A stretch of DNA of 64,000 nucleotides, taken from Macrostomum lignano (lineage: Eukaryota). A model generated the notes under the pieces. It was not told the origin of the DNA, ran no database searches, and saw nothing but the letters and a program-made list of their open reading frames with translations. Position numbers and translations under genes: made by a program. The stretch covers positions 806,001 through 870,000 of the forward strand of contig NIVC01000412.1 of assembly GCA_002269645.1 (NCBI GenBank), written 5' to 3'. This document shows positions 1,072 through 38,924 of the stretch, one piece after another; within the stretch, counting starts at the first letter, position 1, and every line of letters starts with the position of its first letter.

Positions 1072-2683
1072 ATGGTGTACAACTACACAAAACCCAGAGG
1101 CCCCATCGCCGCCATGTACAGCAGCCCGGGGCCAAAGTACATGCTGCCCAGCCTGGTTGGCCAGCCGCATCACGACCCTCGCTCCGTGCACAACCGCGGC
1201 CCGGCCTATCCTTTCGGCCTGAGGCACGGCAAATTCAAGGACGAATCGAGCCCGGGACCTTGCTACCTGCCGCTGACCTACAGAGACGGCAAAGATGGTT
1301 CTCCGCATTATTCGCTGTACGGCAGGCCAAAGGATGGCACCCTGTTCTCGGCCCCAGGTCCCGGCGCCTACAAGCCTGAGAGCACCAACAAGGAGGTGTA
1401 CTCAAGGGCACCGGCCTACAGCTTCGGCCTGAGGCATCATCAGTTCAGGACTGACAATACACCGGGTAAGGGAATGAGGCATTGCGGGCCCTCGACTGCG
1501 GCAGTACGAAATCTGTGGGTTCTGCTTCGTTACTTGCTGAGATTCTCAGGGTTGGGATTCTCGATTTTGGGATTCTCGATTTTGGGATTCTCGACTTTGG
1601 GATTTTTTACTTTGGGATTCTCGACTTTGGGATTCACGGTTTTGGGATTCTCGATTTTGGAATTCTCAGAGTTGGGATTATCAGGGTTGGGATTCTCAGG
1701 GTTGCATGGGATTCTCAGGGTTGGGATTCTCAGGGTTTGGGATTCTCAGGGTTTTATTTCTCTGTGTCGGGGCTCTCAATTTTTCTATTTAAGTTTTTTT
1801 GAATTAATGCGAAAAGAATACAGAATTCCCCAAAACGCAGCGGACTTTGCACTCCACCGCAGGTCCCAACGCGTACACGCCGGACCCCATGCTGGGCAAG
1901 ACTTTGCGCAGCGAGAAAAAAGCCGCCCCCAGCTACACATTGGTCGGCCGCTCCAAGGTCGGCGGCTTCCATGAGGACCTGCAGAAGGTGAGGATCTGAC
2001 AGGGGTTCAAAGGAGGGATCTGAGAGGGGGTCAATTGAGGGATCTGAGAGGGGTCAACTGCAGAGGGATCTGAGAGGGGGGTCAACTGAGGGATCTGAGA
2101 GGGGTCAACTGCAGAGGGATCTGAGAGGGGGGTCAACTGAGGGATCTGAGAGGGGTCAACTGTTTAAAGTGCATGTACCTGAAGTACATGTAGGAGAACT
2201 GAAGGAATATCACACATACATGTACAGCAGCGATCACCTACATGTATACCAAAGCTGCCACCCAAAACCGACCTCTGCAGACCCCGGGTCCAGGCGCCTA
2301 CAGCGTGGTACCGGCGGGCCGGTACAGGCACAACCCGCCGGCTTACAGCCTGACCAGCAGGAACTCGATGCCGGGTGACAGCACCACAAAACCGGGTCCT
2401 GGCGCTCACTCGCCAGAGACTGTGAGTTCATTTCTCAAACTTAAAAATTTAACAATTATATATGCAACTGCAATTGCAGTTCAGAATTTTGGAAAAAGGT
2501 ACATGTATTAGACTAACAAAAACGTTTTACACAACATATCGGCGATAGTATTTGATAGTACTTATCGACCTTTAAAACCTGCAGAATTTCTACCGCATGA
2601 AACGGGCGGCCCCAGCGTTCAGCTTCGGCATTCGCCATTCGCAGTACAAAGGCGAATTCATCACCGACGCCGATATGGAGTAA
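1072..2683 (+). CDS. ODF3: Outer dense fiber protein 3 / SHIPPO-1 (PGP-repeat) ciliary protein, 4 coding exons, ~252 aa
   Basis: join(1072..1465,1863..1987,2281..2421,2585..2683). All introns are GT-AG and phases are consistent (759 nt). Repeated PGPGAY / P.YSFG.RH motifs; N-term MVYNYTKPRGPIAAMYSSPGPKY; C-term APAFSFGIRHS. Confidence 0.92.
1549..1755. repeat. Minisatellite (GGGATTCTC-core, ~15-bp units) in ODF3 intron 1
   Basis: Tandem gggattctc(g/a)..tttt units; explains the spurious GFSILGF ORF extension. Confidence 0.85.
1990..2160. repeat. Minisatellite (GAGGGATCTGAGAGGGGTCAACT-like) in ODF3 intron 2
   Basis: About 6 degenerate 23-26 bp units starting directly at the donor site. Confidence 0.85.
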
Positions 2684-4320: not shown

Positions 4321-5082
4321 ATAAAAAACAAAAAGGAAACTATGAACTAACACTCAATATTGATACAATTTATACAAGGAATGAACGAAAAAGAACTTAT
4401 ATTAAATAGGTCATGTTTATTATAGTATCACCAAATTAAAACTGAAATAATTTGCCAGAGCAGCCAGCCTTGGGACAGTTGGTGGTTAAACACAGAAAAA
4501 CACGCACATAGATGACTTGGCATACATAACGCATGTACTATAACATACTGTATGTTATTATGTCGCACAACACAAGGAAATTTGAGTTCTTCTGTACCAA
4601 AAGCTTGTTAAAACAAAATAGAAAAAAAACACAGCAGAAATGTAAAAGCAGGAATATTTATGCAGTTAATAATGCACGATAGATAGACAAATAAACACAA
4701 TAGTTAAATGGGAAGACAAATTAAAACAAAATTTAATAGAAGTAGGAATCGCACTAATAAACCAGTGGAATAATTCGATAAATTTGTCAACCGAATTTCA
4801 AGCGTCAAAATTTAAATATGAAAAAATAGTAATAATTTATAAAAACGAAAATTTCCACCCGATACAATCCAGCAAAGGTTGGGAAAAATGGCTAGTTTGC
4901 GCGGGCTGCGCTAACTGGCGTTTGTGTACGCTGCCCACCCCTGCCCCTCCCCCGCGGCTTTCCCCCACCCCCGGTGTTGGGGGGGGGGGGTTGCGTGGCG
5001 GGGGGTTTTATACCCCGCGGTTGGCTCTTTGGCCTCGCTGTCGCATTGCAATTGAAAAAAAAAATTTTTATGCTGCTGAGTC

Positions 5083-6114
5083 ATGTCACACGATTCTCTG
5101 ACGGTAAGAGAACTGCGCATGGCATTGCGTGCTAAAGGCTTGCAAACCGTAGGCAACAAGCGCACCCTATTGGAGAGACTTCTGCAGTCTCAAGGCTCAG
5201 TGGACACGGGACCCATCGATGAATCGGACACCAGCAATCCATCGAGAAGGCGAGGGCCCGACGACGGGACGGCGGCGGTCGGCGGCGGCGAGGCGGCAGG
5301 AGGGACCCACGGGACTGGCGACCTGGACCGGGACCTGCGGGAGGCAGAGAAGCAGCTGCGCTTGCTGACAATTCGTCGGGACCAAGCGCGCCTGGAAGCC
5401 GAGATCCGTCAGCTGGACCGCCGTGCCGATGAGCCGCAGCGGCGACCTGCAAATGCCTCAGTGCCCGGTGAGTACTCAAGCCTTGAGGATTTAGTGCTGG
5501 GACCTACTGTCAGAGTGCCGGATGAGGTGCAGCAGGCGGGGCAGCAGCACCCGAATGCGTACCGGGTGCCGGAGTTCATCAGCGCTCGCAAGCGGCTGGC
5601 GCTGAACAAGTCAAGTCAAGCCAGCAAGCAGGCCGCCCTGGACAGCCTCTCGGTTGGCGACTGGATCACCGGAAACGCCAACGCGCTGATGCAGATGCTG
5701 AAGGACGGCAGACTCCTCGTCCTCCGTGATGGCGCTATCGACATGTCGGAGCTGCTGGAGTACCTGAAGCACACGGCAAAAATTGGCGACCTCCTCGATC
5801 TCGGATTCGACCGCGGCCGCGTTTTGCGCTATGATGATGAGTACAGAGCGCAGCAGGCTGAGGCCGGCGCCTGGGACAGCTCGGTGACCGACCTGGGTCT
5901 GGTGGCGGCACACCTGATGGCTCCGAATCTTCAACTGCAGGCCGGCTCAGCGGGCAGGTCATCAGCAAAGCGACCGGTCTGCTTCGACTTCAACAAGGTG
6001 TCCGGCTGCCAGCGCAACCCGTGTCGTTTCGCACACAGTTGTAGGCGCTGCGGCCAGGCGCACTCGGAGGCCTCCTTCCACAGAGCGGAGGGCGGCCAGG
6101 CGGCAAAAAACTGA
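5083..6114 (+). CDS. Gag-like ORF1 (343 aa): N-terminal SAP domain, coiled coil, C-terminal CCCH + CxxC zinc-finger region
   Basis: LTVRELRMALRAKGLQTVGNKRTLLERL (SAP consensus); CFDFNKVSGCQRNPCRFAHSCRRCGQAH. Confidence 0.88.
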   Translation: MSHDSLTVRELRMALRAKGLQTVGNKRTLLERLLQSQGSVDTGPIDESDTSNPSRRRGPDDGTAAVGGGEAAGGTHGTGDLDRDLREAEKQLRLLTIRRDQARLEAEIRQLDRRADEPQRRPANASVPGEYSSLEDLVLGPTVRVPDEVQQAGQQHPNAYRVPEFISARKRLALNKSSQASKQAALDSLSVGDWITGNANALMQMLKDGRLLVLRDGAIDMSELLEYLKHTAKIGDLLDLGFDRGRVLRYDDEYRAQQAEAGAWDSSVTDLGLVAAHLMAPNLQLQAGSAGRSSAKRPVCFDFNKVSGCQRNPCRFAHSCRRCGQAHSEASFHRAEGGQAAKN

Positions 6115-6186
6115 TGGACGGGGTTCAGCGGCAGGGGTCTCTTAACATCGAGTCGCCCGCCCCTGCCGCTGCTTCTGTCGAACCCC
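6105..6186 (+). promoter_or_regulatory. Candidate -1 programmed ribosomal frameshift signal (A_AAA_AAC + 8-nt spacer + GC-rich hairpin)
   Basis: Heptamer 6105-6111 is in the gag reading phase and the -1 frame is ORF2. Stem 6120-6126/6180-6186 (7 bp) plus 6127-6137/6160-6170 (11 bp). Confidence 0.65.
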
Positions 6187-8087
6187 AAAAGGAGGGCGAC
6201 TCAAGCGGGACCCTCTCCACCGACTTGCGCCTTGAAGCCTGGCGCCTCGAGCTGGCCGACACGGAGATGCCAACGAAGCTCGCGCAGTTCGTTTTGAGCG
6301 GTGTGAAGGACGGTTTCCGCATCAGGAACGTCAGTAGTCCGGTGGACTCTGTCGAGCAGGAGAACTACGGCTCCATCGGTCAGCATCGAGTCGAGGTTCA
6401 GGCCCAAGTCCGCCGGGAACTGCAAGCTGGAAGATATCGCGTTAGCGCCAAGCCGACTATTGTGAGCGCGCTGGGCGCCATTCCGAAGTCCGGGGGCGGC
6501 ATCCGGCTCATCCATGACTGCAGCCAGCCCCAGGGTCGGGCCGTCAATGATTTGTTTGCTTGCCAGCAGAAGCTTCGGTTTTCTTCGGCGGCTGCCTTTG
6601 CCAGGAAGCTGCGCCAGGACATGTACATGTGTAAAGTCGACCTGAGCCAGGCCTACCGGTCTTGCGGCATTCACCCGGACGACCACTGCCTCACCGGTCT
6701 GAAGTTCACGTTCGAGGGCGAGGCGGAGCCGACCTACATGGTGGACACCCGGCTGCCGTTCGGAGCGGCAGCATCCGTGAGCAGCTTTTTCCAGATCAGC
6801 AACGCCATTCGGTTTATGATGCTCAAGCGCAGGTTCTTCAACTTCGAGGTCTACATGGACGACTTCGGCTTCGCGGGTTCGCTGACTGAGTGCTGGCGCT
6901 TTTACAACAAGCTGACGCAGCTGCTGCAGAGCCTGGGCCTGACTGTCAACTGGAAGAAGTGCGTGCAGCCGACGCAGGAGATGTGCTTCCTGGGCATTCA
7001 GTTCAACACGCAGTCGGGGCTGATGAGTCTGCCAGAGACGAAGGTCGAGGAGCTGCAGGCCTGCCTTGACCTCTGCTGCACAAAGCGGCGGATCTCCAAG
7101 CACGAGTTGCAGAAGCTGGTGGGCAGGCTCAACTGGGCCTGTCAGGTGGTCTGCAACGGCCGGCCGTTTCTGCGAGACCTGATCGACCGCGTCAACGACT
7201 TGTCGAGCCCGAAGGATCGGCTGTTGGTGGATGGCCAGTTCAAGAGCGTCCTGAGCTGGTGGAAAGTTGCTCTGCGGCAGCAGCCAGGTCGCGAGCTCTG
7301 GCCTGCTGCCAGGAGGCCGGTTGCCATGGAGACGGACGCCTGTCTGGTGGGGGCAGCGGCTGTTCTGAGAGATCCGGCTGGTTCTGACTGGTGCTATCTG
7401 CAGTGGGAAGTCGACGCTGGGAGCGAGTTCAGCGATTGCTGCATCAACTACAAGGAGGCTGCCGCGGTGCTGCTGGCGTTGCTGCACTGGCGCCGTCAAC
7501 TGCACAACTGCCGGATCGCTGTCTACTGCGACAATGCTGCAGCCTGCGCGATTATCAACAAGGGGTCATCCAGGGAGCCCCGGCTGTTGCGGCTGCTGCA
7601 GACTGTTGCTCTGCTGTGCCTAAAGCAGAACATTGTGGTCACCGCCCACCATGTGCCCGGCCGGTTTCAGCTGTTTGCCGACGCCGCCTCCCGCCTGCAT
7701 TGCCGGCAGGAGTTGCTGAATTTTCTGTTGCGAGCCTATGCAACCGCCTCTGTTTGCCCGCATGAATTTGCGGGACATGCGCTTAGCCCTGCCTCCGCCG
7801 CCTTTCTTTTTTTACAGGTCGCCTCCCTGGGTCTCTCGACGCTGCCGCCGACAAACTGCTCCAGCAGGCCTACGCATCATCGTCCAAGAGGTCGCTGTCA
7901 TCTGCTGTCCGCTCCTGGCAACGCTTCTGCCGAGAGCGGCGGCTCGACCCACTCGGCTGTCGGGCGGAGGATCTCGCAAACTACGTCCGCCAGCTCGTGG
8001 ACGGCCGGCTCAGCTCCTTCGGCAGCGTCCGCGTGCATATCAGCGCTCTGTCCGCCAGTTTCCGACTGGCGGGAGTGCCGGACCTGA
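6114..8087 (+). CDS. Reverse transcriptase / RNase H ORF2 (657 aa) of the YR retrotransposon
   Basis: RT motifs IRLIHDCS, KVDLSQAY, LPFG, YMDD, FLG; DIRS-type RNase H motifs ETDAC, INYKE, CDN, ADAASR. Confidence 0.95.
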   Translation: MDGVQRQGSLNIESPAPAAASVEPQKEGDSSGTLSTDLRLEAWRLELADTEMPTKLAQFVLSGVKDGFRIRNVSSPVDSVEQENYGSIGQHRVEVQAQVRRELQAGRYRVSAKPTIVSALGAIPKSGGGIRLIHDCSQPQGRAVNDLFACQQKLRFSSAAAFARKLRQDMYMCKVDLSQAYRSCGIHPDDHCLTGLKFTFEGEAEPTYMVDTRLPFGAAASVSSFFQISNAIRFMMLKRRFFNFEVYMDDFGFAGSLTECWRFYNKLTQLLQSLGLTVNWKKCVQPTQEMCFLGIQFNTQSGLMSLPETKVEELQACLDLCCTKRRISKHELQKLVGRLNWACQVVCNGRPFLRDLIDRVNDLSSPKDRLLVDGQFKSVLSWWKVALRQQPGRELWPAARRPVAMETDACLVGAAAVLRDPAGSDWCYLQWEVDAGSEFSDCCINYKEAAAVLLALLHWRRQLHNCRIAVYCDNAAACAIINKGSSREPRLLRLLQTVALLCLKQNIVVTAHHVPGRFQLFADAASRLHCRQELLNFLLRAYATASVCPHEFAGHALSPASAAFLFLQVASLGLSTLPPTNCSSRPTHHRPRGRCHLLSAPGNASAESGGSTHSAVGRRISQTTSASSWTAGSAPSAASACISALCPPVSDWRECRT

Positions 8088-8794
8088 CCAGGCACCCGCT
8101 GCTGCACCTGGTTCTGCGGGGAGCCAAGCGCGAGCTGGGGTCGGAGCCGAGTCACAAGCTGCCGGTGTCGCCAGACCTTTTGTCGAGACTGCGGCTGCAA
8201 GTCGACAGCTCGAATCCTGTGCAGGCGGCCTGCTGGGCTGCGGTCATGTGCGCTTGGTGGGGGATGTTCAGGAAGTCCAGCCTGCTGCCGCGAGGGCGCG
8301 CCGATCCGCCAGTGCTGCGACTGAGCTCGCTGGCAAGATGCCCCGAAGGCCTGCTTCTGACGTCCAGCTTCGGGAAGACCAACCAGTACGGTCGGACGCA
8401 TCGCGTGCTGCTGCCAGAGTTGACTTCGGGCCACCCGCTCTGTCCAGTGGCGGCACTGCGAGGCCACCTGCGCTGCAACCGGCTGAAGCAGCGGCAGCAG
8501 GGCCTGTTTTCATTCAGCAGTGGATCGTCCGGTCACGCATCTCTGACGTCCCGGAGGCTCGATGTACAGTTCAGGTCGTGGCTCGGCAAGGCGGGAGTGC
8601 CGGCGGCCGGGTTTTCTGTGCATAGCCTGCGGCGAGGCGCCGCCACCTGGGCGGCCCGGTGCGGCCTGTCAGTGCGGGAGATCCAGTGCGTGGGTGACTG
8701 GCGCAGCGACGCAGTGAGCGTCTACCTGTCCCGCGATGACACGGCTCTGCGTGCGGCGCGCAAGCTTGCTGTTGCGGCGCTTGACCAAACCTGA
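7818..8794 (+). CDS. Tyrosine recombinase ORF3; frame is open from at least 7817, with no in-frame ATG before the catalytic domain
   Basis: Catalytic motifs FRKSSLL (R), KTNQ (K), HSLRRGAA (HxxR), VGDWRSDAVSVYL (W, Y). N-terminal arm AYASSSKRSLSSAVRSWQRFC lies upstream of the ORF-track GTG start at 7997. Confidence 0.92.
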
Positions 8795-9654
8795 CGTGTT
8801 TCGCGGTTTTTTTGGAAGAAAGGTTTTGGGCTCCTTTTTTGTTTGCTTGTCCGCTTTTGCTTGCCTCTGCTTGGTCTGCTTTTGCTCTAGTCTGTTTTCT
8901 TGCTGCTTTTGGTGTTGGGGGGAGTGCATGGCAGCCTTCCCTGTCCTCCTCGCTGTTCCTGCGCCATTTGCTGCTCTTGAGCTTGCTGCGTTCGTCTTCT
9001 GGGGTGGGCAGTGGGCACTAATGGCTAGTTTGCGCGGGCTGCGCTAACTGGCGTTTGTGTACGCTGCCCACCCCTGCCCCTCCCCGCGGCTTTCCCCCAC
9101 CCCGGTGTTGGGGGGGGGGGGGGGGGGGTTGCGTGGCGGGGGGTTTTATACCCCGCGGTTGGCTCTTTGGCCTCGCTGTCGCATTGCAATTGAAAAAAAA
9201 ATTTTTTTTCGTATCCTGTCACTCTTTTAATCCTGCTTTGATCCGTTCTAACTGTTGTCAATAATGCTTTAATATTTTCTCGTAATCGGTCTGAAATATA
9301 CGGGGGGGAGTGCATGGCAGCCTTCCCTGTCCTCCTCGCTGTTCCTGCGCCATTTGCTGCTCTTGAGCTTGCTGCGTTCGTCTTCTGGGGTGGGCAGTGG
9401 GCACTAATGAACAAAACTTACAAAAATAGAATTTACAATTAATTTAGCGCGTCAATTTCATAGAAGAAACTGAGATAATGTCACAGAAAGCAGACAAACA
9501 AAAATTATCTGTTGTTTACACAGATTACGGTGGATAGTAGTTCAGGCTCCCAGTAGCATAAGTAGTATGTAAAGCAACTAAAATAGAAATTTCTATCTTA
9601 CAGCAGTTTGAATGAAAACTTATTAATTAAATTTAACTTAGAGGTCCTCACCTC

Positions 9655-10045
9655 TAATTGTCCTCATCCCGCTTCAGACACCTGTCTATACCCTCTTCAA
9701 ACACCTGTCCATACCCTCTTCAGACACCTGTCTACCCTTATTAGACACCTGTCTCTACCCTCATTAGACACCTGTCTCTACCCTCATTAGGCACCTGTCT
9801 CTACCCTCATTAGACACCTGTCTCTACCCTCATTAGACACCTGTCTCTACCCTCATTAGACACCTGTCTCTACCCTCATTAGACACCTGTCTCTACCCTC
9901 ATTAGACACCTGTCTCTACCCTCATTAGACACCTGTCTCTACCCTCATTAGACACCTGTCTCTACCCTCATTAGACACCTGTCTCTACCCTCATTAGACA
10001 CCTGTCTCTACCCTCATTAGACACATGTCTGTACCCTCATTAGAC
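9655..10045 (-). repeat. 22-bp minisatellite (TAGACACCTGTCTCTACCCTCAT); right, inverted arm
   Basis: Reverse complement of the 3370-4320 array, with mirrored order of unit variants. Confidence 0.9.
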
Positions 10046-14700: not shown

Positions 14701-15529
14701 AGCACATCATATTACAGACACAATAGACACGCAGCACATTATATTTCAGACACAATAGACACGCAGCACATCATATTACAGACACAATATACAACATTGG
14801 CACAAAACAGTCAGGGTCACAGAGTGCACAACATACCAGATAGCGGTTGTGAGTCAGGAAGAACAGCGAGAACGGTATAGTGACGGCAATGGTGGCGTGA
14901 GTAGATGGAAATCCATACTCAAGTTCGTAACGCTTCTCCAGCTTAGCCACAGGCGGACTGGCCGGCCGGGGACTCCTAATAAGATCCTTGATAGCCTGGC
15001 CGAACCACATGGAGAAGCCCCAGGCTATGACCACACGCCGACAAACGTAGCCATCAACATTCCAGAACCAGTAGGGGAAAAATGTACAGTTGAATTCCTC
15101 ATTGCCCAGCATAGCGCCAAAGGAGAACAGATGGTACAGGAACAGGTTCTTCACTTTATAATCGACATTGTTCTTCATTGAATAGTCCATCAGCGAGTGC
15201 TGCACGCGACTTTTCACGCTCTGTTTCCATTGGTCGTCGCTGCGCTGCCTCCTGTGTCGAAGGTGCTGCGGTCTGCCCTGCTGATGCTGCTGTTGAAGAG
15301 GCTTTCCAGCTGTCACAGATGGCTGAATCCGGACATCTTGCTCTGTTCCAGAATCATTATCGCTGCAGTTTGATAGCTCCATCTTGTCCGGCTCATTGTC
15401 CTCGTCCTCCTCGTCCATGGAGTTCAATCCGCTGTCCTTGAAGCCGATGTCCAGACCGCATAGGCTTTGAAATCTTGCCACCAGATTAGGATCGTTGAGT
15501 TGAGAGATGAGACTCTTGACCCGATACAT
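11746..15529 (-). CDS. SGPP: Sphingosine-1-phosphate phosphatase (PAP2 family), 4 coding exons, ~453 aa
   Basis: complement(join(11746..12006,12369..12686,13209..13298,14837..15529)); all GT-AG, phase 0, 1362 nt. PAP2 motifs KDLIRSPRP, GFPSTH, SRIYLGMHSVLDV. N-term LNDPNLVARFQSLCGL resembles the SGPP2 N-terminus. Acceptor at 15541 just upstream of the ATG. Confidence 0.93.
12095..12325. repeat. ~20-bp minisatellite (AGAACATCTAATAGAGCAG) in SGPP intron 3
   Basis: About 10 degenerate tandem units. Confidence 0.8.
12763..12893. repeat. ~29-bp tandem repeat (GCAACTGAGGATCTGGGAGGCTGGCCTA) in SGPP intron 2
   Basis: 4-5 units. Confidence 0.8.
13335..14790. repeat. 32-bp satellite (AGACACAATAGACACGCAGCACATCATATTAC) filling SGPP intron 1
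   Basis: Period 32; occupies about 95% of the intron 13299-14836. Confidence 0.95.
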
Positions 15530-18097
15530 CGGTGCAGTGGCTGTAGCAAGAGAGTTGATTAGGCCAAGTAAGAGCAGTGTCAGACTCAAACTACCGACAC
15601 CCTAGCCACACCTTTATGCATAAAAAACGTCTCAGATCGAACGCAAGAAAGCAAGCGAGCGAGTCTTGCTAATAATAGGCTTGAGGACGTGGAGGAGGGG
15701 TGGCGGCGGAGAGGACGGAGCGGTGGCGCGATGGGGTGGGTCCGCAGCCAATATAATGCCAGGGCATGTACTGCACTGCACTGCGCAATATTGTGTGTAA
15801 CAGTACGAGCTCAGGCAGAGAAAGTAGAATGAAAAAACTAACATAGAATCTTAATTTTCTAAACGAGAAGCTTTATGAATATCAATAGAACTATAAAAAA
15901 GGCACAACATATCAAAATATGAACATTGGGTCTGCTTCCTATTAAAAGCAATAACATTTTTTTTGTGCTGAAAATGAAAAATTCCTATCTCCGTAGTGTA
16001 TTTTTAGGCGAAAAGTGGCCTTCAAAACTTTTTCCTTGAAACGTGAGTGTCGCATCCTGTATATATACGTTGCTTTAGTTGTCTTTGGTGGAAACCTTAT
16101 CAATCTTATAGCTCCTTTAGGAAGATTTAGATTGAGCTTTAGCGCTATAACTATTAAGCTAACTCCAGAGTAACTAGATAACTAGATAGACAGCGGTCAG
16201 CCAGTGAGAGAGTTTAAGGCTAATAGCACGAGTCCAGCGCGTGTACAGAGCAGACTTGGTCCACAGAATTTCTCTCTCAACAAATAGGCAAAAAAGAGGC
16301 AGTTACACCCAACAGAACAGAAAAGCTTGGGTAAGAGAGTAAAATGGTACTTATATATAGAAGTATTTAAGAAACGCAGCTCGAGTCTAAAGTTTTTTGC
16401 TAGGAAACGACCTAGAGAAATAATAAAGTACTCCTCGCGTAATTAGGGTTTAAATGCGCGTGTATGACCTGCAAGGGAATGCAGGGGTCGCAAAAGTTGT
16501 TTAATTTCCCCTTAACGGCCAGATAGAGAGGCTAGCGCATGACCACGGGGACAGAGAAGGGGAGATAGGAGAGAGAATAGAGCAAAGACAAGAGAGATAG
16601 GAGAAATGAGAAAATGATAGGAGACGAGACGAGAGGAGAGGAGAAGAGAGGAGAGAAGAGAGATTAGAGAAAGGGATATTAGAGAGGAGAGCTAAGAAGA
16701 GACCAACCTAGAGCTATTGTCGCTTGTTGCTATTTTCAATTTTAAAAGGACCCGAGAGCTGGAGCTTTTAGTTCAGCTATTCCTATTGGTTTGCAAATAT
16801 ATTTCACTAAATTTAAATGAAAATAAGACAAGCTTACTGCAAACACCTGTACAAAATGGCCCCACCTGTGTCTGTGTAGGCGGGTCAGCTGGAGAATACA
16901 AGCAGCCTGGGCAGAGCAAGAAATCCATAAATAGAAACTTGGATTGCAATGCTTTGAGATTAAGATTGATTCAATGTGAACTGTGGACCACATGGTATGG
17001 TATGCTTACAGTGTATAGTCCAGTTTCAACCTAGATAGTCTAGATTAGTAATGCAAGCAAGCATTAGCTAAGTGAAAACTGCTGGCACGCACTGACACGA
17101 GTTCTGTAACTTGTAAGCTAAATCGGGAAATTACATTAAGTACACAGCGAGTGCATGGCAAGCACAGTAACACTTGAAAGAGAAAACAGGGCTACATGAC
17201 CTAACTTATAGGCTTATCAAATACAAGTTATACTTATTGAACTCAATGATCCTCAGAGGTTTTTTCTGATACCTTCATGAGACACTTCATATCTTTGACA
17301 GATTGGAAGACCTATACATTGCAGAAAGAATATAATATGACGAAGAGAAAGTGGGGCTTGTATGCAGGAATATTGGCCAAAAGAGGGTTATTATGCAATT
17401 CACACCATGAGGGCCAATCCCCAGGGCACAGAGTGTACAAGTCTGACGATTAGAAAGTCACAGCCACTGTAAACCTCAGGAGTCAGCAGAATGGACAACA
17501 GCATCTCAGTGCTACATGCATTTGTGGGATGATGGTGCCAAAAGTATTATTATTATCACAATATAGACTTCTACTTGAAAAATCCTACTTTTAATAGATA
17601 ATTCATACTTTTAATTAAATACATGTGCAAATAAAGTAGATATAAATAGAAAAAATTAAATTGAATAGTTTTTATTATAGAAATAATAAACTTTAACTTT
17701 ATCAAAAATCTTTTTATTGTATACTTTGTCTTTGATTATGCCATGAAAATATTTTGTCTAAGTTTAAATAAAATATCTATAGCTACTATTGCTCTATTTA
17801 AGCCAAGGGATATTCAAATTCATTGACTAAGGCTTAGTATATTTAAGATAATATATCTTATATTTAGATAATACACTTATCTTATAATTATAATTATAAT
17901 AGGGCTTTTAGACCTAAATTTTTTTCAACTTCTTTTTTGTTAATTTATTGATTATTACTCATTTTTATATTTTGGATAACACTCTTAAGATAGCTTTTCA
18001 ATATATATCTAGCTGATAGATCTAAATTCCTAAGATTTCAAATAGGTTAAGGGATGCAACACATTGTCATTACATTTATCAATCTATATAATATGTT

Positions 18098-32677: not shown

Positions 32678-35600
32678 CTACACATGGCTAATTGTTAAAT
32701 ATGACGACTTCAAAGACGACGGCTGGCTCGGCCGCTTCGAATCGATCATTCTGGAGCACGAGCGGCTTTGCGCCAGCGGCTCGGCTGCGTTCATCATCGA
32801 TTGGCCGCTGCTGCTGGCGCCATCGGCGTTAATCCTTGGCCTGGAGACGCAGCTCGGCACCTGGAACTGGAACTGCTGGCAGGCCATGTAGCCCTCACTG
32901 CCGGAGTGATGCGGCGGCAGAGGCTGGGTGAGCTCCTGGTAGGCTGCCCGCTGGTGCTGCTGACCCTGATAGTGCAACAACAGCTGCTGCTGGCTGCGGT
33001 AGTTTCTGCTGCTGCTTGAGCTGATGACCTTCGTAGCTGAGAGGGCATCATTGTGGCGAATGAATGCGATGACTTACCAGTAGCATAGGAGGTGGCTTTC
33101 GTATTTATGATAAATTTACAACCTTTATCCCATACATGTACGTCTCTGAACCCCACACCGCTAACCCCACATCGCTAACCCCGCATCGCTAACCCCACAC
33201 CGCTAACCCACACAACTAACCCCGCACCGCTAACCCCACACCGCTAACCCACACAACTAACCCCGCACCGCTAACCCCACACCGCTAACCCACACCGCTA
33301 ACCCACACCGCTAACCCCACACCGCTAACCCACACCGCTAACCCCACACCACTAACCCCGCACCGCTAACCCCACACCGCTAACCCCACACCGCTAACCC
33401 CACACCGCTAACCCCACACCGCTAACCCCACACCGCTAACCCACACCGCTAACCCCACACCGCTAACCCCACACCGCTAACCCCACACCGCTAACCCCAC
33501 ACAACTAACCCCGCACCGCTAACCCCACACCGCTAACCCCACACAACTAACCCCACACCGCTAACCCCACACCGCTAACCCCACACCGCTAACCCACACC
33601 GCTAACCCCACACCACTAACCCCACACCGCTAACCCCACACCGCTAACCCACACCGCTAACCCCACACCGCTAACCCCACACCGCTAACCCCACACCGCT
33701 AACCCCACACCGCAGACACGATTAGGTGATAATTCTCTTTTAATCATTATGCGATAATTTTCCAGAAAAAGAGCATGATCGACAACTCACGCATCGTTCT
33801 GCTTGCGTTTGCTGCAGCGGCCGCGGCGGCGGCGGCGACGGCGTCTGGATCATCTTCTACAGAGCTGAGGTCGTCGCCGTTATTCAACGAGGCGTTGCGG
33901 TGTCGCTGCGGATGCCGGTGCGGCTGTTGCCTGCCGAGGCTGTCATATCGATGCGAACCACCGCCTCCTGCGCCTGGCATCGCTACCTGCGGAGTGACAG
34001 GCACCGAGACTGATACTGGAGTGACAGGCACAGAGACTGATAATGGAGTGAACAGACACCGAGACTGATACTGGAGTGACAGACACCGAGACTGATACTG
34101 GAGTGACAGACACCGAGACTGATACTGGAGTGACAGGCACCGAGACTGATACTGGAGTGACAGACACCGAGACTGATACTGGAGTGACAGGCACAGAGAC
34201 TGATAATGGAGTGACAGGCACTGAGACTGATACTGGAGTGACAGACATGAAGAGCTCTGCTCACCATGGCATACTGTTTATCAAGCAAGACTCTCTCTGA
34301 ACTGCTCGCGGGAACATCCATGGGAGACAGGCAGCCTATTGACTGTTGCAGCTGCCTCTGCTGATTCTGTTGAGTTGACGAACTCTCCACCGATGTGCCC
34401 TGTGTTCTTGAGCGATTTTCGTCTGAAATTTGACAGGTTGATGTAGTCAGGCGTAACCGAAATTATTGACACAAACGATGATACAATCTTATCTTTTAAT
34501 TAATCATCGAAAATGTTTAAAATAAACAAAATTGCATTGATATTTCATTTTACTAAGACAAGAAACCCACTAAATAAGATAATCTGCCCCATCTGAATCA
34601 AGGCCCCCGACTATCCAATGCAGCATTCCGCATAGCAGTCTTGGATTAATGTGCTCAGTCGTGAGCTCAGCCGTTAGCTACAGCTGCTCAGATGAGCATT
34701 ATTCAGAAAATCCTTCTTTTACTTACCGCAAGAATTGCTCATTTTTTCCACTTCTCTCTCTTCCTCTCGCTCGGTGTGACTTGAGTGCATTGGAAAAAGA
34801 CCACAACTGATCAGGCAGCTTACAAAAGGCAGATTCACGAAAAAAGAAAAAATCGATGGCAATACTATAGTACGAGTATAAGGCATGCTTCTTCTAGGAC
34901 TTTTGATACTAAAAAAATTAACAGAAAAACTAATTTTTCATTGCGTCAGCTTCAGGCTTCAGGCTTTCATAAATTCGAAAGTTAAAGTTTATATAGTCAA
35001 ACTCCACAGTGTTGAAAGGGCCATTTAAATAGAGCTTTTATAAACGTCAATATTTAGCTTTTTGAAGTTATAGGCTTCAGAAGTTTCCAACATTACTACC
35101 TGTAATACCCGAATGCTCAGATATAATCCTATTTTCTATTTTGGCTCCTCATTACAATTTCCGCTCTTGTTGGAACAGAATATAAAAGTATGACTGTTTT
35201 GGACACCCTGGCGCAAAGCCTTCGACGATATGCTCCCACAACCAAGAGCTCTTATCGTTGAGGCGTCACTCACTAGGTGCACTTTTACGACGGTGACCCG
35301 CGCACCAGCGCAGCAGAATAATCACCGCCAAAGTGGTCAGGCCCACCAGAGCCACCAGGAACACGATTAGCACCGAAGCCAGCACTGCCGGCTTGGCATC
35401 TCTTTCGCTCCCGTTGAAATTCTCGCCGTCAGCGGCGCTACCTCCGGCTGACAGTGTCGGATCGTTGCCGTGGCCTGACAGCCACCGGTTGTCATTAGCA
35501 GCGACTGAACTGCCCGGTCGCCGACCGCCGCCCTCGAAAGTGACGATCACCAGCTTCCGACTGACGCGGCCGCGCGGCCTGTCCTTGTCGAAGACCTCCA

Positions 35601-38600
35601 GCTGAAATCGGTAGACACCGGCGGTGCACAATTTCGGCGTGGAATTCAGGCACACGTCGCCGGAATTCGAATCGATTTGGAAGGTGTGCAACTGCGAGCT
35701 CGAACCCCGGTCTACTAGCCGGTAGCCCATTTGACGGTGCTCAGCGACGGCGTCAGCATCGTTGGCCGCAACGTCATCAGCAGTCGTCAGGCAATTACCT
35801 GTCAAAGCTCGGTCGCAGCTGACGTTGAGCCTCAGTGGCTGCGTGTGCACGAACTCTGGAAAGTTGTCGTTTACGTCGGCCAAGCGGACAATCAGGCTGG
35901 CTGTGCCCGTTAGCCGTCGCACCGTTCCGCTATCCACCGCCAGCAGCTCCAGAGTGAACGAGCTTTGACCATGCGGCATGTCTGCGTCAAGTTGACGGTT
36001 GAGCAGCACCTGACCGGAGCCGTCCACACGAAAGGTCGGCGAGCCACGCAGCCTGTACGTCACAGTACCGTTCAGGCCCAAGTCGCCGTCAATGGCAGCG
36101 ACTTTTGTCACTATCGAGCCGATAGTGGCATTTTCTAGCACGGTGACTGGCGGTAGCCATTCAGGCAAGCCTTGTGAACTGCAACCAGCAACTGCCTGTG
36201 GATCACTTAGATTAATCAGGAACCTCGGATAGCAGTCATTGACGTCGAGAATTCGAACGGAGACGTTGGTCTCAGCCTGGTGGATGACGGCTCCATCATG
36301 AATTGCATCAATGTCCTGGACGACAAGGCTAAAACTGAAAGCGTCTTTGGTCTCGCGATCAAACTTATCCGTAGTAGTGAGCGAATAGCTGTTGTTGCGG
36401 TCGTAGTCAACTTGGAATTTCGATGCGCCGTCGCCTCGGATTTCAAAACGACGATTGGCCCGGTTCTGACCGTCGTAATCAGGATCGTGGATGCGGAACT
36501 GCGGAGGTTAGGGTTATAAGTTTATTTAATTGGTGCATTTTATAGCCAGGGAGCTGTGTGCACTTTAGGCGACATTGTCACACAACCGGCGACAGGCATT
36601 ACACAACTGCCCATTCTGCCGACTCTCCTGAGAGCAGACACACAAGCGCGCGGATACGTACGCAGTCATACGCACAGGCACACACTCACACAGGAGTGTA
36701 CAGCGGCCCTAACTTTATTTAACCTTGAAGGCCGTTAATTGCACGAGCAGAGCCAAGCTGAGATTACAATTTAGCCCCATATTATGGCGACTGCACTTAG
36801 AATCGAGCCTGGGCCGCTAGCATATACAAGCGAGAGTGCCGCGCTAGACGGCTAAGTTGCAACCAAGGACCACTAAGAAGTTACCGTTGTAATTTTGAGT
36901 GCAACTGAGATACAGAGTTGTGAGCAATGCAAAGCTGGCCTTCAAAATATTTTACAATATTTACGACTGTTACGTACGATGTACGTACAACGGTAACTTC
37001 TAGTGGTCCTTGACTGCACCCCAATTAGTTAGGGGCGCTTAATAACCTAAAATTTTTATGCTCTGGAATGACAGAATCTTTTACAAGCCAGGACTTGCTA
37101 AGTAATTTTTGCCAACCCACAACTCAAACGATTTGGACAATGTGAAGTTCTGAGCTCATTAGTATATCAAGTTTACTGTCCTCAACGAAATAAATTTAGC
37201 TCGTAAAGCTGTGAAAAGCGACCCATTCATGCAGTTTGCAGTTTTTCTTATAAACACTTACATTATAGACTCGGGACGACTCTTTCGTGTCCTCTGAAAT
37301 GCTAAAGTCGATTGGCGTCACCTCAAACTTGGGCGCATTGTCATTCTGATCCAGCACTGCAATGTAAACTTCCCGTGTGCTTGTTTTCTGCGGAGTTCCA
37401 CCGTCGTAGCATTGAATCCCCACCACGTAGCTACTGCGTTCTTCTCTGTCTAGCGAGTAGGTTGCATTCAATTCGTAGGACACCGGCGATGACGGAGCCG
37501 AACTGCTGGTCAGTAAAAACCTGGGCGGGTTAAACTCGTCCGGCCGCAGCGAGCAGGTGACAATGCCTCCAGCGCCGGTGTCTAAATCGCTGGCTATAAT
37601 GCTGAGAATGTGAAGTGGTACTTTATTGTTCTCAGTGATGGACACGTGATAATTTCTGTTTTTAATCTGAGGCGGGTTGTCATTCTCGTCTAAAACAATG
37701 ATCGTCACAGTGGCCGTTGCGGACTTTGGCGGCTTTCCGTTGTCCACTGCCGCGACCACAACGCGATGCTCCTTGATCTGCTGATCATAGTCCAACTCAC
37801 TGGGGTTCTTCAGCGTCAAACTGCCGCGTCTGGTGAGGCTGAAGAGGTTGCTTTTATCCGACACTAACGTGTAGTGCACCTGGCCGTACTTCGAGTCAGC
37901 GTCGGTGGCATTCAAACGCAACAGCGGATTCGGCGGATTGGTCTCCGACACGCTGACGTTAAATTTCTGGTTGGGGCTCCACTTAGGCTCATTGTCGTTG
38001 ACGTCAATGACGCGGACGCTGACGGTGAGGCTGGCAGTGTGACGCCCGTCCGAGGCAATCAAACAGTAGGTGTACTGCTCGATCTTTTCCCGGTCAAGTC
38101 CGTCCAACAGCTTGAGATACACGTCCCTGGGCCCGCCGTTGCTGTTGTTTTGCAGTTCGAGAGCAAAAGTCGGGTCGGCCGGCTTGCCCGGAGTGCACGA
38201 CTCCAGACGGTAGCTCAGGTGGCAGCTGGCGAAGCCTCTCTTATCGGCGTCCTCCGCCTTCGGCAGGCTGAGCTTTTTTCCGTGTTCAGCGCTCTCCTGC
38301 ACTTCCACCTCCTTCTGGTACGGACCGAAGTTCGGCGGCGAGTTGTTCTGATCGTCCACCTGGATTTTCACGTCGACAAGCTTGGGGACCCTCTGCTCCC
38401 TGGAGTTGCTCATGAACACCTCGGTCTTGATCTGGCAGACGTCCTTGGCTGTCTCCTCGTCACAGTTTGGATTGCTGTAAGAACTGCAGGCTGTCTCGCG
38501 GATTAAAGGTCCGATAGAAGTCAAATTTCCGCCGGAGTCCACCCGGACAATCTCATCAGCCTGCGCTATCTGGTACGTTACGTCACTCCAGTCATCCGAA

Positions 38601-38767
38601 AATTTATCGGCCAAGCTTTTGGGCAGCTTGTCGCGTAGCAAACCGAAATGGACCGATTTTTTGTCGTCCTCCATTGCGTAGAACTGAATGTCTGATTGCT
38701 TTGGCTGGCTGGCAGAGACCACAGCCATCGCTAGGAACAGAGCTGCTAGCCGGCACAGGTGCGGCAT
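32678..38767 (-). CDS. PCDH: Protocadherin-like adhesion protein: signal peptide, 7 cadherin repeats, TM helix, low-complexity cytoplasmic tail
   Basis: complement(join(32678..33036,[33078..33095 optional],33791..33986,34265..34422,35274..36498,37262..38767)); GT-AG, phases consistent. DxNDNxP, LDRE and DxD motifs; TM VLASVLIVFLVALVGLTTLAVIILL. Tail exons are less certain. Confidence 0.88.
33150..33712. repeat. 14-bp telomere-like minisatellite (CACACCGCTAACCC)n in a protocadherin intron
   Basis: About 40 units containing CTAACCC. Confidence 0.92.
33990..34245. repeat. 27-bp minisatellite (GAGACTGATACTGGAGTGACAGACACC) filling protocadherin intron 33987-34264
   Basis: About 9 units; the terminal unit supplies the acceptor ...actccgcag. 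Confidence 0.92.
36535..36856 (-). mobile_element. tRNA-derived SINE-like element, copy 2 (protocadherin intron)
   Basis: Reverse complement aligns by eye with 25350-25700 (ggctcgatt..agtgcagtc; cttggctctgctcgtgcaattaacggcctt; aaagttagggccgctgtacactcctgtgtg). Confidence 0.65.
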
Positions 38768-38924
38768 GTCAGATCTGATGAAGATTAGTCAATTAGTTCA
38801 TCATGATTATTCTTTAAGTGTCAAACAATATCAGATGTGACTTATTTATAAACTTTTTTACATCTAAATCCAAACACAGAGATTAAATGATTTTTTCTGA
38901 GCTATCTGGACAACATTGTGCTCA

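What the first reader, a model, noticed from the sequence alone, without database searches (positions are those of the whole stretch)
5070..8794. YR retrotransposon appears to make its recombinase from a spliced mRNA that removes gag-pol
Seen: the YR frame is open from 7817 and contains the N-terminal binding arm, but its first in-frame ATG is deep in the catalytic domain. It is preceded by a strong acceptor (cctttctttttttacag|G, AG 7816-7817). Near the 5' end there is a strong donor (ACG|GTAAGA, 5103/5104). An ATG at 5070 (weak context, 13 nt upstream of the gag ATG) gives 34 nt to the donor, which is exactly the phase needed. The product is MLLSHVTRFSD-G-RLPGSLDAAADKLLQQAY...YR, 336 aa (1011 nt). 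In unspliced RNA the same ATG is only a 21-codon uORF, allowing leaky scanning to gag (G at -3). A TATA-like TTTTATA at 5006-5012 would put the start site upstream of 5070. Inference: an env-like subgenomic splicing strategy, which I do not recall being demonstrated for DIRS-order elements; novelty is unverified.
Basis: partly seen in the sequence, partly recalled or inferred. Interest (0 to 1): 0.85.

Follow-up and report, generated by a model that had tools for sequence, protein, structure and literature searches.

The report
Spliced Gag–recombinase message in a retrotransposon

Summary
The element spans 4889-9409 and is an intact split-direct-repeat retrotransposon: gag, RT/RNase H, tyrosine recombinase (YR). 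The YR frame has no usable ATG. The AG at 7816-7817 scores best of 257 AGs in the gag-YR span.

The best donor in the element is CCG|GTGAGT at 5467|5468. It leaves one base of a split codon, as the acceptor requires, when read from the gag ATG (5083).

A homologous gag donor and a CAG| acceptor at the RNase H/YR boundary, both in that phase, occur in all 13 related elements examined. The pol-to-YR frame offset varies among them. NCBI gene models in amphioxus and a limpet use exactly this one intron.

The likely product is a 453-residue fusion of the Gag N-terminus (SAP domain, coiled coil) to YR. A -1 frameshift site at the pol/YR junction exists only here and has no downstream structure. By contrast, gag/pol frameshifting is well supported.

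No RNA data could be consulted. I found no published description of this splicing.

The parts
4889..9409 (+). Whole element (4521 nt): split-direct-repeat YR retrotransposon, single copy in the window, with all three reading frames open
   Evidence: Repeat map; self-BLAST and tblastn show no other copy; frame map
4889..5069 (+). Repeat A1. It contains a G12 run (4979-4990) and the TATA-like TTTTATA (5006-5012)
   Evidence: about 95% identical to A2
5070..5135 (+).
   Evidence: no upstream ATG in the 40 nt shown before the gag ATG in L001, L007 or L008
5083..6114 (+). gag ORF (343 aa): SAP domain 5095-5187, then a coiled-coil region, a conserved core, and a C-terminal Cys/His cluster
   Evidence: Pfam SAP, E 5.7e-07; gag alignment
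5104..5109 (+). Second-best GT in the element. Leaves no split codon when read from the gag ATG
   Evidence: not conserved in position
5468..5473 (+). Conserved splice donor CCG|GTGAGT (exon 1 ends at 5467 = first base of gag codon 129, GGT)
   Evidence: Rank 1 of 188 GT sites. Homologous NGT|RAG donors in 13 of 13 elements. The codon is GGT wherever the residue is Gly (11 elements), although GGT makes up 6% of Gly codons in this gag
6105..6111 (+). A_AAA_AAC slippery heptamer in the gag frame, directly before the gag stop (6112-6114): likely gag-pol -1 frameshift site
   Evidence: also present in phase in L001, L004 and L014
6117..6179 (+). Stem-loop 5 nt downstream of the gag/pol slippery site
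   Evidence: -41.2 kcal/mol, z -2.56; kept in L001 and L004, with 4 pairs showing changes on both sides
6045..8087 (+). pol frame (open from 6045; ATG at 6114 overlaps the gag stop). RT 6480-7004, RNase H 7311-7601. The stretch after 7817 is not conserved as protein
   Evidence: Pfam RVT_1 E 1e-13 and RT_RNaseH E 2e-05; the pol-frame tail diverges or stops early in relatives
7800..7817 (+). Splice acceptor: pyrimidine tract plus CAG (AG 7816-7817); exon 2 starts at 7818
   Evidence: Rank 1 of 257 AGs. CAG| at the RNase H/YR boundary in 13 of 13 elements, always leaving two bases of a split codon
7808..7814 (+). T_TTT_TTA heptamer in the pol frame (rival: -1 frameshift into YR). It is part of the acceptor's pyrimidine tract
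   Evidence: In phase. Absent from L001, L003, L005, L007 and L008. No downstream structure, z +1.24
7818..8794 (+). YR coding exon. The frame is open from 7787 and the first ATG is at 8246. Catalytic Arg at 8270-8272, HxxR in HSLRRG, Tyr at 8723-8725; stop at 8792-8794
   Evidence: the catalytic residues are invariant in the alignment
8917..9023 (+). Repeat B1
   Evidence: 100% identical to B2
9022..9207 (+). Repeat A2 (G19 run at 9110-9128)
9303..9409 (+). Repeat B2 (3' end of the element)

Best explanation
The element is an intact Ngaro-like tyrosine-recombinase retrotransposon.

Unspliced RNA would encode Gag (5083-6114). A -1 ribosomal frameshift at A_AAA_AAC (6105-6111) would extend Gag into Gag-RT/RNase H.

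The recombinase frame lies one base behind the pol frame (-1 offset) and has no start codon of its own. It is most likely expressed from a spliced subgenomic mRNA. The donor is CCG|GTGAGT (exon 1 ends at 5467, the first base of gag codon 129). The acceptor is tttttttacag|GT (exon 2 starts at 7818). The 2350-nt intron removes the gag core and all of RT/RNase H.

Translation would start at the gag ATG (5083). The product would be a 453-residue protein: Gag residues 1-128 (SAP domain and coiled coil), a Gly codon rebuilt across the junction, and the complete YR.

Shown here: the signals, their phases, their rank within the element, their conservation in relatives, and their use in public gene models of relatives.

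Inferred: that the splice happens in this host, and that the shared Gag N-terminus brings the recombinase to Gag/nucleic-acid complexes.
For: 1. The YR frame has no ATG before 8246, which lies 8 codons before the first catalytic Arg. All catalytic residues are intact.
2. AG 7816-7817 is the best of 257 acceptor candidates. GT 5468 is the best of 188 donor candidates in the gag-YR span.
3. Phases fit. 5083-5467 is 385 nt, or 128 codons plus 1 base. Base 7818 is the second base of a YR-frame codon.
4. In 13 of 13 related elements a donor sits in gag upstream of the conserved core, and it leaves one base of a split codon. In the same 13, a CAG| acceptor at the RNase H/YR boundary supplies the other two bases. 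The elements are the window, L001, L007, L008, L009, L011, L013, L014, L015, L017, L019, L020 and L021. Among the 12 whose pol frame can be read, the pol-to-YR offset is -1 in 5 and +1 in 7.
5. The donor is kept at the nucleotide level. The split codon is GGT in 11 elements, TGT in one and AGT in one. The amino acids differ (GE, CE, GK, SM, GN). GGT makes up only 6-35% of Gly codons in these gag genes, and the product of those shares is 1.3e-08.
6. The two codons before CAG vary in amino acid (FL, HF, HS, SL) but stay pyrimidine-rich.
7. NCBI gene models XP_019639177.1 (Branchiostoma belcheri) and XP_050388701.2 (Patella vulgata) are Gag-N-terminus plus YR proteins. Each has a single GT-AG intron at the homologous donor and acceptor.
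8. A host cadherin intron in the window uses ordinary GTAAGT...CAG signals.
Against: - No transcript data for this host or for the closest relatives could be consulted. No protein with a Gag-N-terminus plus YR architecture turned up among close relatives.
- The NCBI models may be partly ab initio, in which case they rest on the same sequence signals rather than on independent evidence.
- G-[E/K] may be a conserved Gag dipeptide.
- F-L-x-x-Q is a conserved Pol peptide, which would favour a pyrimidine-rich stretch anyway.
- A GTRAG that left two bases of a split codon would create an in-frame stop. Inside an ORF, donors can therefore only leave zero or one base, so the donor phase alone is weak evidence.
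- The 13 elements are related, so their agreement is not 13 independent observations.
- One relative (L006) has RT-RNase H-YR as one continuous ORF.
- This copy also has a second good donor (5103|5104) and an in-phase slippery heptamer.
Confidence: 0.66

Rival explanations
1. One reading: transcription starts upstream of 5070 and translation starts at the weak ATG at 5070. Donor 5103|5104 is spliced to 7818. The product is a 336-residue protein with 11 leader residues followed by YR.
For: All signals exist and the phase fits. The donor is the second-best GT in the element. L008 has CCC|GTAAGG 13 nt after its gag ATG, also in a phase that reads into YR.
Against: The ATG at 5070 is absent from L001, L007 and L008, and its context is weak. 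An early GTAAG is found in only 2 of 8 elements. Read from the gag ATG, this donor leads into the non-conserved pol-frame tail rather than YR. The gene models of relatives use the downstream conserved donor.
Confidence: 0.08
2. A -1 ribosomal frameshift at T_TTT_TTA (7808-7814) carries ribosomes from the pol frame into the YR frame. The product would be an RT-RNase H-YR fusion from unspliced RNA.
For: The heptamer is canonical and in phase. It lies 21 nt after the YR frame opens, between the last conserved Pol residues and the first conserved YR residues. The element appears to use -1 frameshifting at gag/pol. One relative (L006) encodes RT-RNase H-YR as a single ORF.
Against: No slippery heptamer occurs at this position in L001, L003, L005, L007 or L008, although L001, L005, L007 and L008 share the -1 offset. 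No stable structure lies downstream: -21.1 kcal/mol, z +1.24. Seven relatives need +1, not -1. An in-phase heptamer is a one-in-three outcome once a T7A run exists.
Confidence: 0.08
3. A short intron within the end of pol, or spliced-leader trans-splicing at 7818, provides YR expression.
For: L005 has a perfect G|GTGAGT 56 nt upstream of the same acceptor. Removing those 56 nt would join Pol to YR in frame. Macrostomum models P0011 and P0127 join pol sequence to YR. The acceptor resembles a trans-splice site.
Against: In the window, none of the better-scoring GT sites in pol (7347, 7119, 6462, 6959) leaves the single base that the acceptor needs (worked out from the coordinates). Near the acceptor there are only weak GTT-type sites. 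L008 has no in-phase GT there, and L007 has only weak ones. A spliced leader would still leave YR without an AUG until 8246. A leader ending in AUG would read the pol frame, not the YR frame.
Confidence: 0.04
4. The splice-like signals are by-products of conserved coding sequence. YR would be made by some unrecognised route (non-AUG or internal initiation), or not at all from this copy.
For: The G-E/K and F-L-x-x-Q peptides are conserved. There is no RNA evidence.
Against: Gly is always encoded by GGT at the donor, against codon usage. The acceptor persists in L013, where the pol stop lies inside the pyrimidine tract, so it is not Pol coding sequence there. YR is conserved as protein from the first codon after CAG|. 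Initiation at 8246 would lose the whole N-terminal domain.
Confidence: 0.1

Closest known systems
Ngaro-like YR retrotransposons (DIRS order; Goodwin & Poulter 2004, as cited in PMC2632668 and PMC3266345)
   Same: Gene order gag, RT/RNase H, YR. Split direct repeats A1...B1A2...B2. No protease, DDE integrase or methyltransferase domain. The YR ORF may share the RT-RNase H frame or be shifted from it (PMC3783388).
   Different: None of the papers I could search describes how a frameshifted, ATG-less YR ORF is expressed. Here a conserved intron and a Gag-YR fusion are inferred.
NCBI RefSeq models XP_019639177.1 (Branchiostoma belcheri, LOC109481127) and XP_050388701.2 (Patella vulgata, LOC126807879)
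   Same: A single intron runs from a donor in gag, upstream of the gag core, to a CAG| acceptor at the RNase H/YR boundary. The donor leaves one base of a split codon and the acceptor supplies the other two. The product is the Gag N-terminus plus YR: 482 and 452 aa, against 453 predicted here.
   Different: These are annotated as uncharacterised host proteins, not as retrotransposon products. Their N-terminal modules differ (no SAP domain). Pol identity to the window element is only about 35-40%.
Retroviral env-type subgenomic mRNAs; in avian leukosis/sarcoma viruses the donor lies a few codons into gag, so Env starts with Gag residues (own knowledge)
   Same: One promoter and one gag AUG, with a donor in gag and an acceptor in front of the 3' gene. 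Unspliced RNA serves both as gag-pol mRNA and as the template.
   Different: The 3' gene is the integration enzyme, not an envelope protein. A whole 128-residue Gag module, rather than about 6 residues, would be carried over. The element is a YR retrotransposon without LTRs.
Spliced subgenomic RNAs of Ty1/copia elements (Drosophila copia, own knowledge; Arabidopsis, PMC5580714; BARE, PMC3735527)
   Same: Partial splicing of a retrotransposon transcript sets the ratio of its proteins.
   Different: There, splicing removes pol to over-produce Gag. Here it would remove the gag core and pol to express the downstream recombinase.

Membership tests
Ngaro-like YR retrotransposon (DIRS order) | Encodes RT, RNase H and a tyrosine recombinase; no DDE integrase or aspartic protease | tested here: met
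   Pfam hits RVT_1, RT_RNaseH and Phage_integrase only. The R, K, HxxR, W and Y catalytic positions are invariant in the YR alignment.
Ngaro-like YR retrotransposon (DIRS order) | Gene order gag, RT/RNase H, YR (in DIRS1-like elements YR precedes RT) | tested here: met
   Frame map and domain positions.
Ngaro-like YR retrotransposon (DIRS order) | Split direct repeats A1 ... B1 A2 ... B2, rather than inverted terminal repeats plus an internal complementary region | tested here: met
   A1 4889-5069 and A2 9022-9207 are about 95% identical. B1 8917-9023 and B2 9303-9409 are 100% identical. B1 and A2 abut with a short overlap.
Ngaro-like YR retrotransposon (DIRS order) | No methyltransferase-like domain after RNase H (this distinguishes Ngaro from DIRS1-like and most PAT-like elements) | tested here: met
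   No Pfam hit beyond RNase H, and only about 70 codons lie between the RNase H match and the YR junction.
Ngaro-like YR retrotransposon (DIRS order) | RT/RNase H groups with reference Ngaro elements in a phylogeny | not tested
   No named reference Ngaro sequences were available from the tools. The closest named relatives are unclassified proteins of Macrostomum, Oculina, Saccoglossus and Branchiostoma.
Retroelement subgenomic splicing (how it works, not family membership) | A donor in or near gag and an acceptor in front of the 3' gene, phase-compatible with an upstream AUG | tested here: met
   5467|5468 and 7817|7818 are both top-ranked, and together they rebuild one split codon. The pair is conserved in 13 of 13 elements.
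Retroelement subgenomic splicing (how it works, not family membership) | The spliced RNA is actually observed | not testable with these tools
   No RNA-seq access. The only indirect support is gene models in two other phyla.
Programmed -1 ribosomal frameshift at gag/pol | X_XXY_YYZ heptamer in the upstream frame, a spacer of 5-9 nt, a stable downstream structure, and conservation | tested here: met
   A_AAA_AAC at 6105-6111. Stem-loop at 6117-6179, z -2.56. The heptamer is present in L001, L004 and L014. The stem is kept in L001 and L004 with compensatory changes.
Programmed -1 ribosomal frameshift at pol/YR | X_XXY_YYZ heptamer in the upstream frame, a stable downstream structure, and conservation | tested here: not met
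   The heptamer T_TTT_TTA is present and in phase in the window only. There is no downstream structure (z +1.24). It is absent from the relatives compared, four of which (L001, L005, L007, L008) have the same -1 offset.

The most novel reading that the evidence does not exclude
A lineage of animal Ngaro-like retrotransposons, found here in material from flatworm, amphioxus, mollusc and probably coral sources, carries a conserved intron spanning the gag core and RT/RNase H. Removing it produces a chimeric Gag-N-terminus-recombinase protein from the gag start codon. This would be the normal, and so far undescribed, way these elements express their integration enzyme. The shared N-terminal module (here SAP plus coiled coil) would tether the recombinase to Gag assemblies, much as Gag-Pol fusions do in retroviruses.
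Probability: 0.4. Interest if true: 0.78.

Novelty: new variant of a known kind. Interest (0 to 1): 0.7.

Why it matters
How DIRS-order elements express a recombinase ORF that is frameshifted, overlapping and lacks an ATG has been noted but not explained (PMC3266345, PMC3783388). A conserved gag-to-YR intron would answer this for one large animal lineage.

It would also:
- add a third kind of retroelement to those that use partial splicing to balance their proteins;
- predict a recombinase that shares an N-terminal DNA-binding and oligomerisation module with Gag;
- show that 'uncharacterised protein' gene models in several animal genomes are retrotransposon products.

The prediction can be checked directly against existing RNA-seq data.

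Tried and rejected
- **-1 frameshift at pol/YR.** I first favoured T_TTT_TTA (7808-7814), because gag/pol has a matching A_AAA_AAC. I rejected it as the general mechanism: the heptamer is unique to this copy and has no downstream structure.
- **Short intron fusing Pol to YR.** This works only in L005, where a 56-nt intron is possible. From the coordinates, the window has no pol donor in the right phase.
- **L004 as a spliced cDNA.** It looked like one, but its breakpoint lies about 45 nt past the acceptor. It is an internally deleted copy.
- **Spliced leader supplying a terminal AUG.** This would read the pol frame, not the YR frame (coordinates).
- **Searches that found nothing.** The metagenome-contig scan with the YR alignment found no relative. 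The word-index protein search with Gag residues 1-128 found nothing. The YR search found only 6 proteins, none with an N-terminal extension.
- **Literature.** Searches and reads found no description of splicing for Ngaro or DIRS YR expression. Goodwin & Poulter 2004 is not held.
- **Scoring caveat.** The donor and acceptor scores use a simple matrix built from textbook metazoan splice-site frequencies (own knowledge). They are rankings only.
- **Exon joining in relatives.** To locate the exon junctions in L013 and L014, I joined exon ranges in memory only, to reproduce the public RefSeq proteins. Nothing was printed or saved.

Full report
**What is there.** The finding lies in a 4521-nt element at 4889-9409. 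It has the repeat layout A1 (4889-5069) ... B1 (8917-9023), A2 (9022-9207) ... B2 (9303-9409). A1 and A2 are about 95% identical; B1 and B2 are 100% identical.

The element has three open frames:
- gag, 5083-6114, with an N-terminal SAP domain;
- pol, open 6045-8087, with RT and RNase H;
- a tyrosine-recombinase (YR) frame, open 7787-8791, with all catalytic residues intact.

There is no protease, no DDE integrase, and no room for a methyltransferase domain. By structure it is a Ngaro-like member of the DIRS order. None of the three frames is broken, and it is the only copy in the window. The host is an animal: cadherin, SHIPPO-repeat and PAP2 exons flank the element. One host intron shows ordinary GTAAGT...CAG signals.

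**Checking the observation.**
- the ATG at 5070 and the gag ATG at 5083;
- ACG|GTAAGA with the exon ending at 5103;
- the pyrimidine tract and AG at 7816-7817;
- the 34-nt first exon, which leaves one base of a split codon as required;
- the 336-codon product and the 21-codon uORF;
- TTTTATA at 5006-5012.

There are two small corrections. The YR frame opens at 7787, not 7817. Its first ATG (8246) lies just before the first catalytic Arg.

**A first rival, frameshifting.** Both ORF junctions carry canonical -1 slippery heptamers in phase: A_AAA_AAC (6105-6111, directly before the gag stop) and T_TTT_TTA (7808-7814).

At gag/pol the case is good. A stem-loop starts 5 nt downstream (-41 kcal/mol, z -2.6). 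It is kept, with compensatory changes, in two relatives. The heptamer recurs in L001, L004 and the limpet element L014. Five other relatives have an in-frame stop between gag and pol instead.

At pol/YR the case fails. The heptamer is unique to this copy. Nothing stable folds downstream (z +1.2). Seven relatives would need a +1 shift, not -1.

**The acceptor is conserved.** I recovered relatives through protein searches and their contigs. In every one, the boundary between the last conserved Pol peptide (H-A/M-x-S...F-L) and the first conserved YR residues is a pyrimidine-rich stretch ending in CAG|. The next two bases complete the first YR codon.
- The two codons before CAG change amino acid (FL, HF, HS, SL) but remain pyrimidine-rich.
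- In the amphioxus element the pol stop codon lies inside the tract, so the tract is not Pol coding sequence there.
- With a simple scoring matrix, this AG ranks first of about 210-260 AGs in the window, L001, L007, L008 and L011.

The ATG at 5070 occurs only in this copy. A GTAAG within the first codons of gag occurs in only 2 of 8 elements.

The best donor in the window is CCG|GTGAGT at 5467|5468, which ranks first of 188 GT sites. It lies between the Gag coiled coil and the conserved Gag core. Read from the gag ATG, it leaves one base of a split codon: 385 nt, or 128 codons plus 1 base. That is exactly what the acceptor needs.

A donor at the homologous place and in the same phase exists in all 13 elements with enough sequence. 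In most of them it is the top-ranked GT.

It is conserved as nucleotides rather than as protein. The split codon is GGT in 11 elements, TGT in one and AGT in one. The dipeptides are GE, CE, GK, SM and GN. GGT makes up only 6% of Gly codons in the window's gag and 14-35% in the others; the product of those shares is 1.3e-08.

The donor-acceptor phase match holds although the pol-to-YR offset is -1 in 5 elements and +1 in 7. One further relative, L006, encodes RT-RNase H-YR as one continuous ORF.

**Independent annotation.** A profile search of 1.84 billion proteins with the YR alignment returned proteins with a Gag N-terminus fused directly to YR.
- XP_019639177.1 of Branchiostoma belcheri (482 aa) belongs to a cluster of five gene models, two of them 482 aa.
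- XP_050388701.2 of Patella vulgata is 452 aa.

At their loci (L013, L014) the models have a single GT-AG intron. It runs from the homologous gag donor to the CAG| acceptor and removes the gag core and RT/RNase H. A Macrostomum lignano model (A0A1I8G0Z6) also joins upstream sequence to YR exactly at this acceptor. I could not see whether RNA-seq supports these models.

**Most likely mechanism.** Unspliced RNA gives Gag and, by a -1 frameshift, Gag-RT/RNase H. A fraction of the RNA is spliced from 5467 to 7818 and translated from the gag ATG. The product would be a 453-residue protein made of Gag residues 1-128 (SAP domain, coiled coil) and YR.

The signals, phases, conservation and gene-model parallels are shown. 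The splice itself in this host is inferred. So is the idea that the shared N-terminus recruits the recombinase to Gag complexes.

My confidence in this mechanism is 0.66. The rivals are:
- a -1 frameshift at T_TTT_TTA, 0.08;
- a short intron or a spliced leader, 0.04;
- signals that are coding by-products, 0.10.

**Caveats.**
- The 13 elements are related, so they are not independent observations.
- Inside an ORF, a GTRAG donor that left two bases of a split codon would create a stop. The donor phase alone is therefore weak evidence.
- G-[E/K] and F-L-x-x-Q may be constrained as peptides.
- The scoring matrix is generic.
- Several relatives are damaged: L003's pol has three frame changes, L007's gag has one frameshift, L021's pol has one frame change, L020's pol has one in-frame stop, and L004 is internally deleted.

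**Novelty.** Partial splicing is well known in retroviruses and in copia-type elements (PMC5580714, PMC3735527). For the DIRS order, the papers I could search say only that the YR ORF may overlap or be frameshifted (PMC3266345, PMC3783388). None proposes splicing or a Gag-YR fusion. The founding Ngaro paper is not held, so prior description cannot be excluded. I rate this a new variant of a known kind.

Noticed in passing
window 6105-6179: gag/pol junction: A_AAA_AAC lies in the gag frame directly before the gag stop, the pol ATG overlaps that stop (TGATG), and a conserved stem-loop starts 5 nt downstream. This points to a -1 frameshift. Five relatives (L007, L008, L009, L011, L013) instead have a single in-frame stop between gag and pol, which suggests readthrough.
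   Followed up: yes
window 5074-5085: The 12-nt motif TGCTGAGTCATG, which ends in the gag ATG, is nearly identical in four elements whose Gag proteins are only 46-64% identical in the gag alignment (L001 the same, L008 TGCTTAGTCATG, L007 TGCTGAATCATG). It starts 5 nt after the end of repeat A1. Its function is unknown.
   Followed up: partly
L005 193-248: This relative has a perfect G|GTGAGT 56 nt upstream of the conserved acceptor. Removing those 56 nt would join Pol to YR in frame. It also has an ATG in the YR frame within that stretch. Different family members may therefore use different routes to YR.
   Followed up: partly
L006 3869-6361: One distant relative (ENA contig) encodes RT-RNase H-YR as a single continuous ORF. 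The acceptor-like CAG is still there but falls in a different codon phase. A related Oculina protein (P0053) ends shortly after the same point.
   Followed up: partly
L004 (whole locus); P0127: L004 is an internally deleted copy: end of gag, the first ~127 Pol residues, then YR. The Macrostomum lignano UniProt entry A0A1I8G0Z6 ('SAP domain-containing protein') is a gag + Pol N-terminus + YR model of a related element.
   Followed up: partly
window 4979-4990 and 9110-9128: The G run in repeat A differs in length between the two copies (G12 in A1, G19 in A2). It accounts for part of the A1/A2 divergence, whereas B1 and B2 are identical.
   Followed up: no
window 9653-9800: A tandem array of 21-23-nt units (AGACACCTGTCT...) starts about 240 nt downstream of the element.
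   Followed up: no
window 1072-1974 (+), 14771-15589 (-), 35269-38788 (-): Host-gene exons: SHIPPO (sperm-tail PG-rich) repeat, PAP2-like, and large cadherin exons. The host is therefore an animal, and the element sits in gene-bearing DNA. One cadherin intron (about 37262 to 36500, minus strand) has GTAAGT...CCGCAG.
   Followed up: partly
L015-L023: Nine contigs carrying these animal retrotransposons are deposited as parts of bacterial MAGs (Sedimenticola, Candidatus Thiodiazotropha, Flammeovirgaceae and others). They are almost certainly host-animal contamination of the bins.
   Followed up: no
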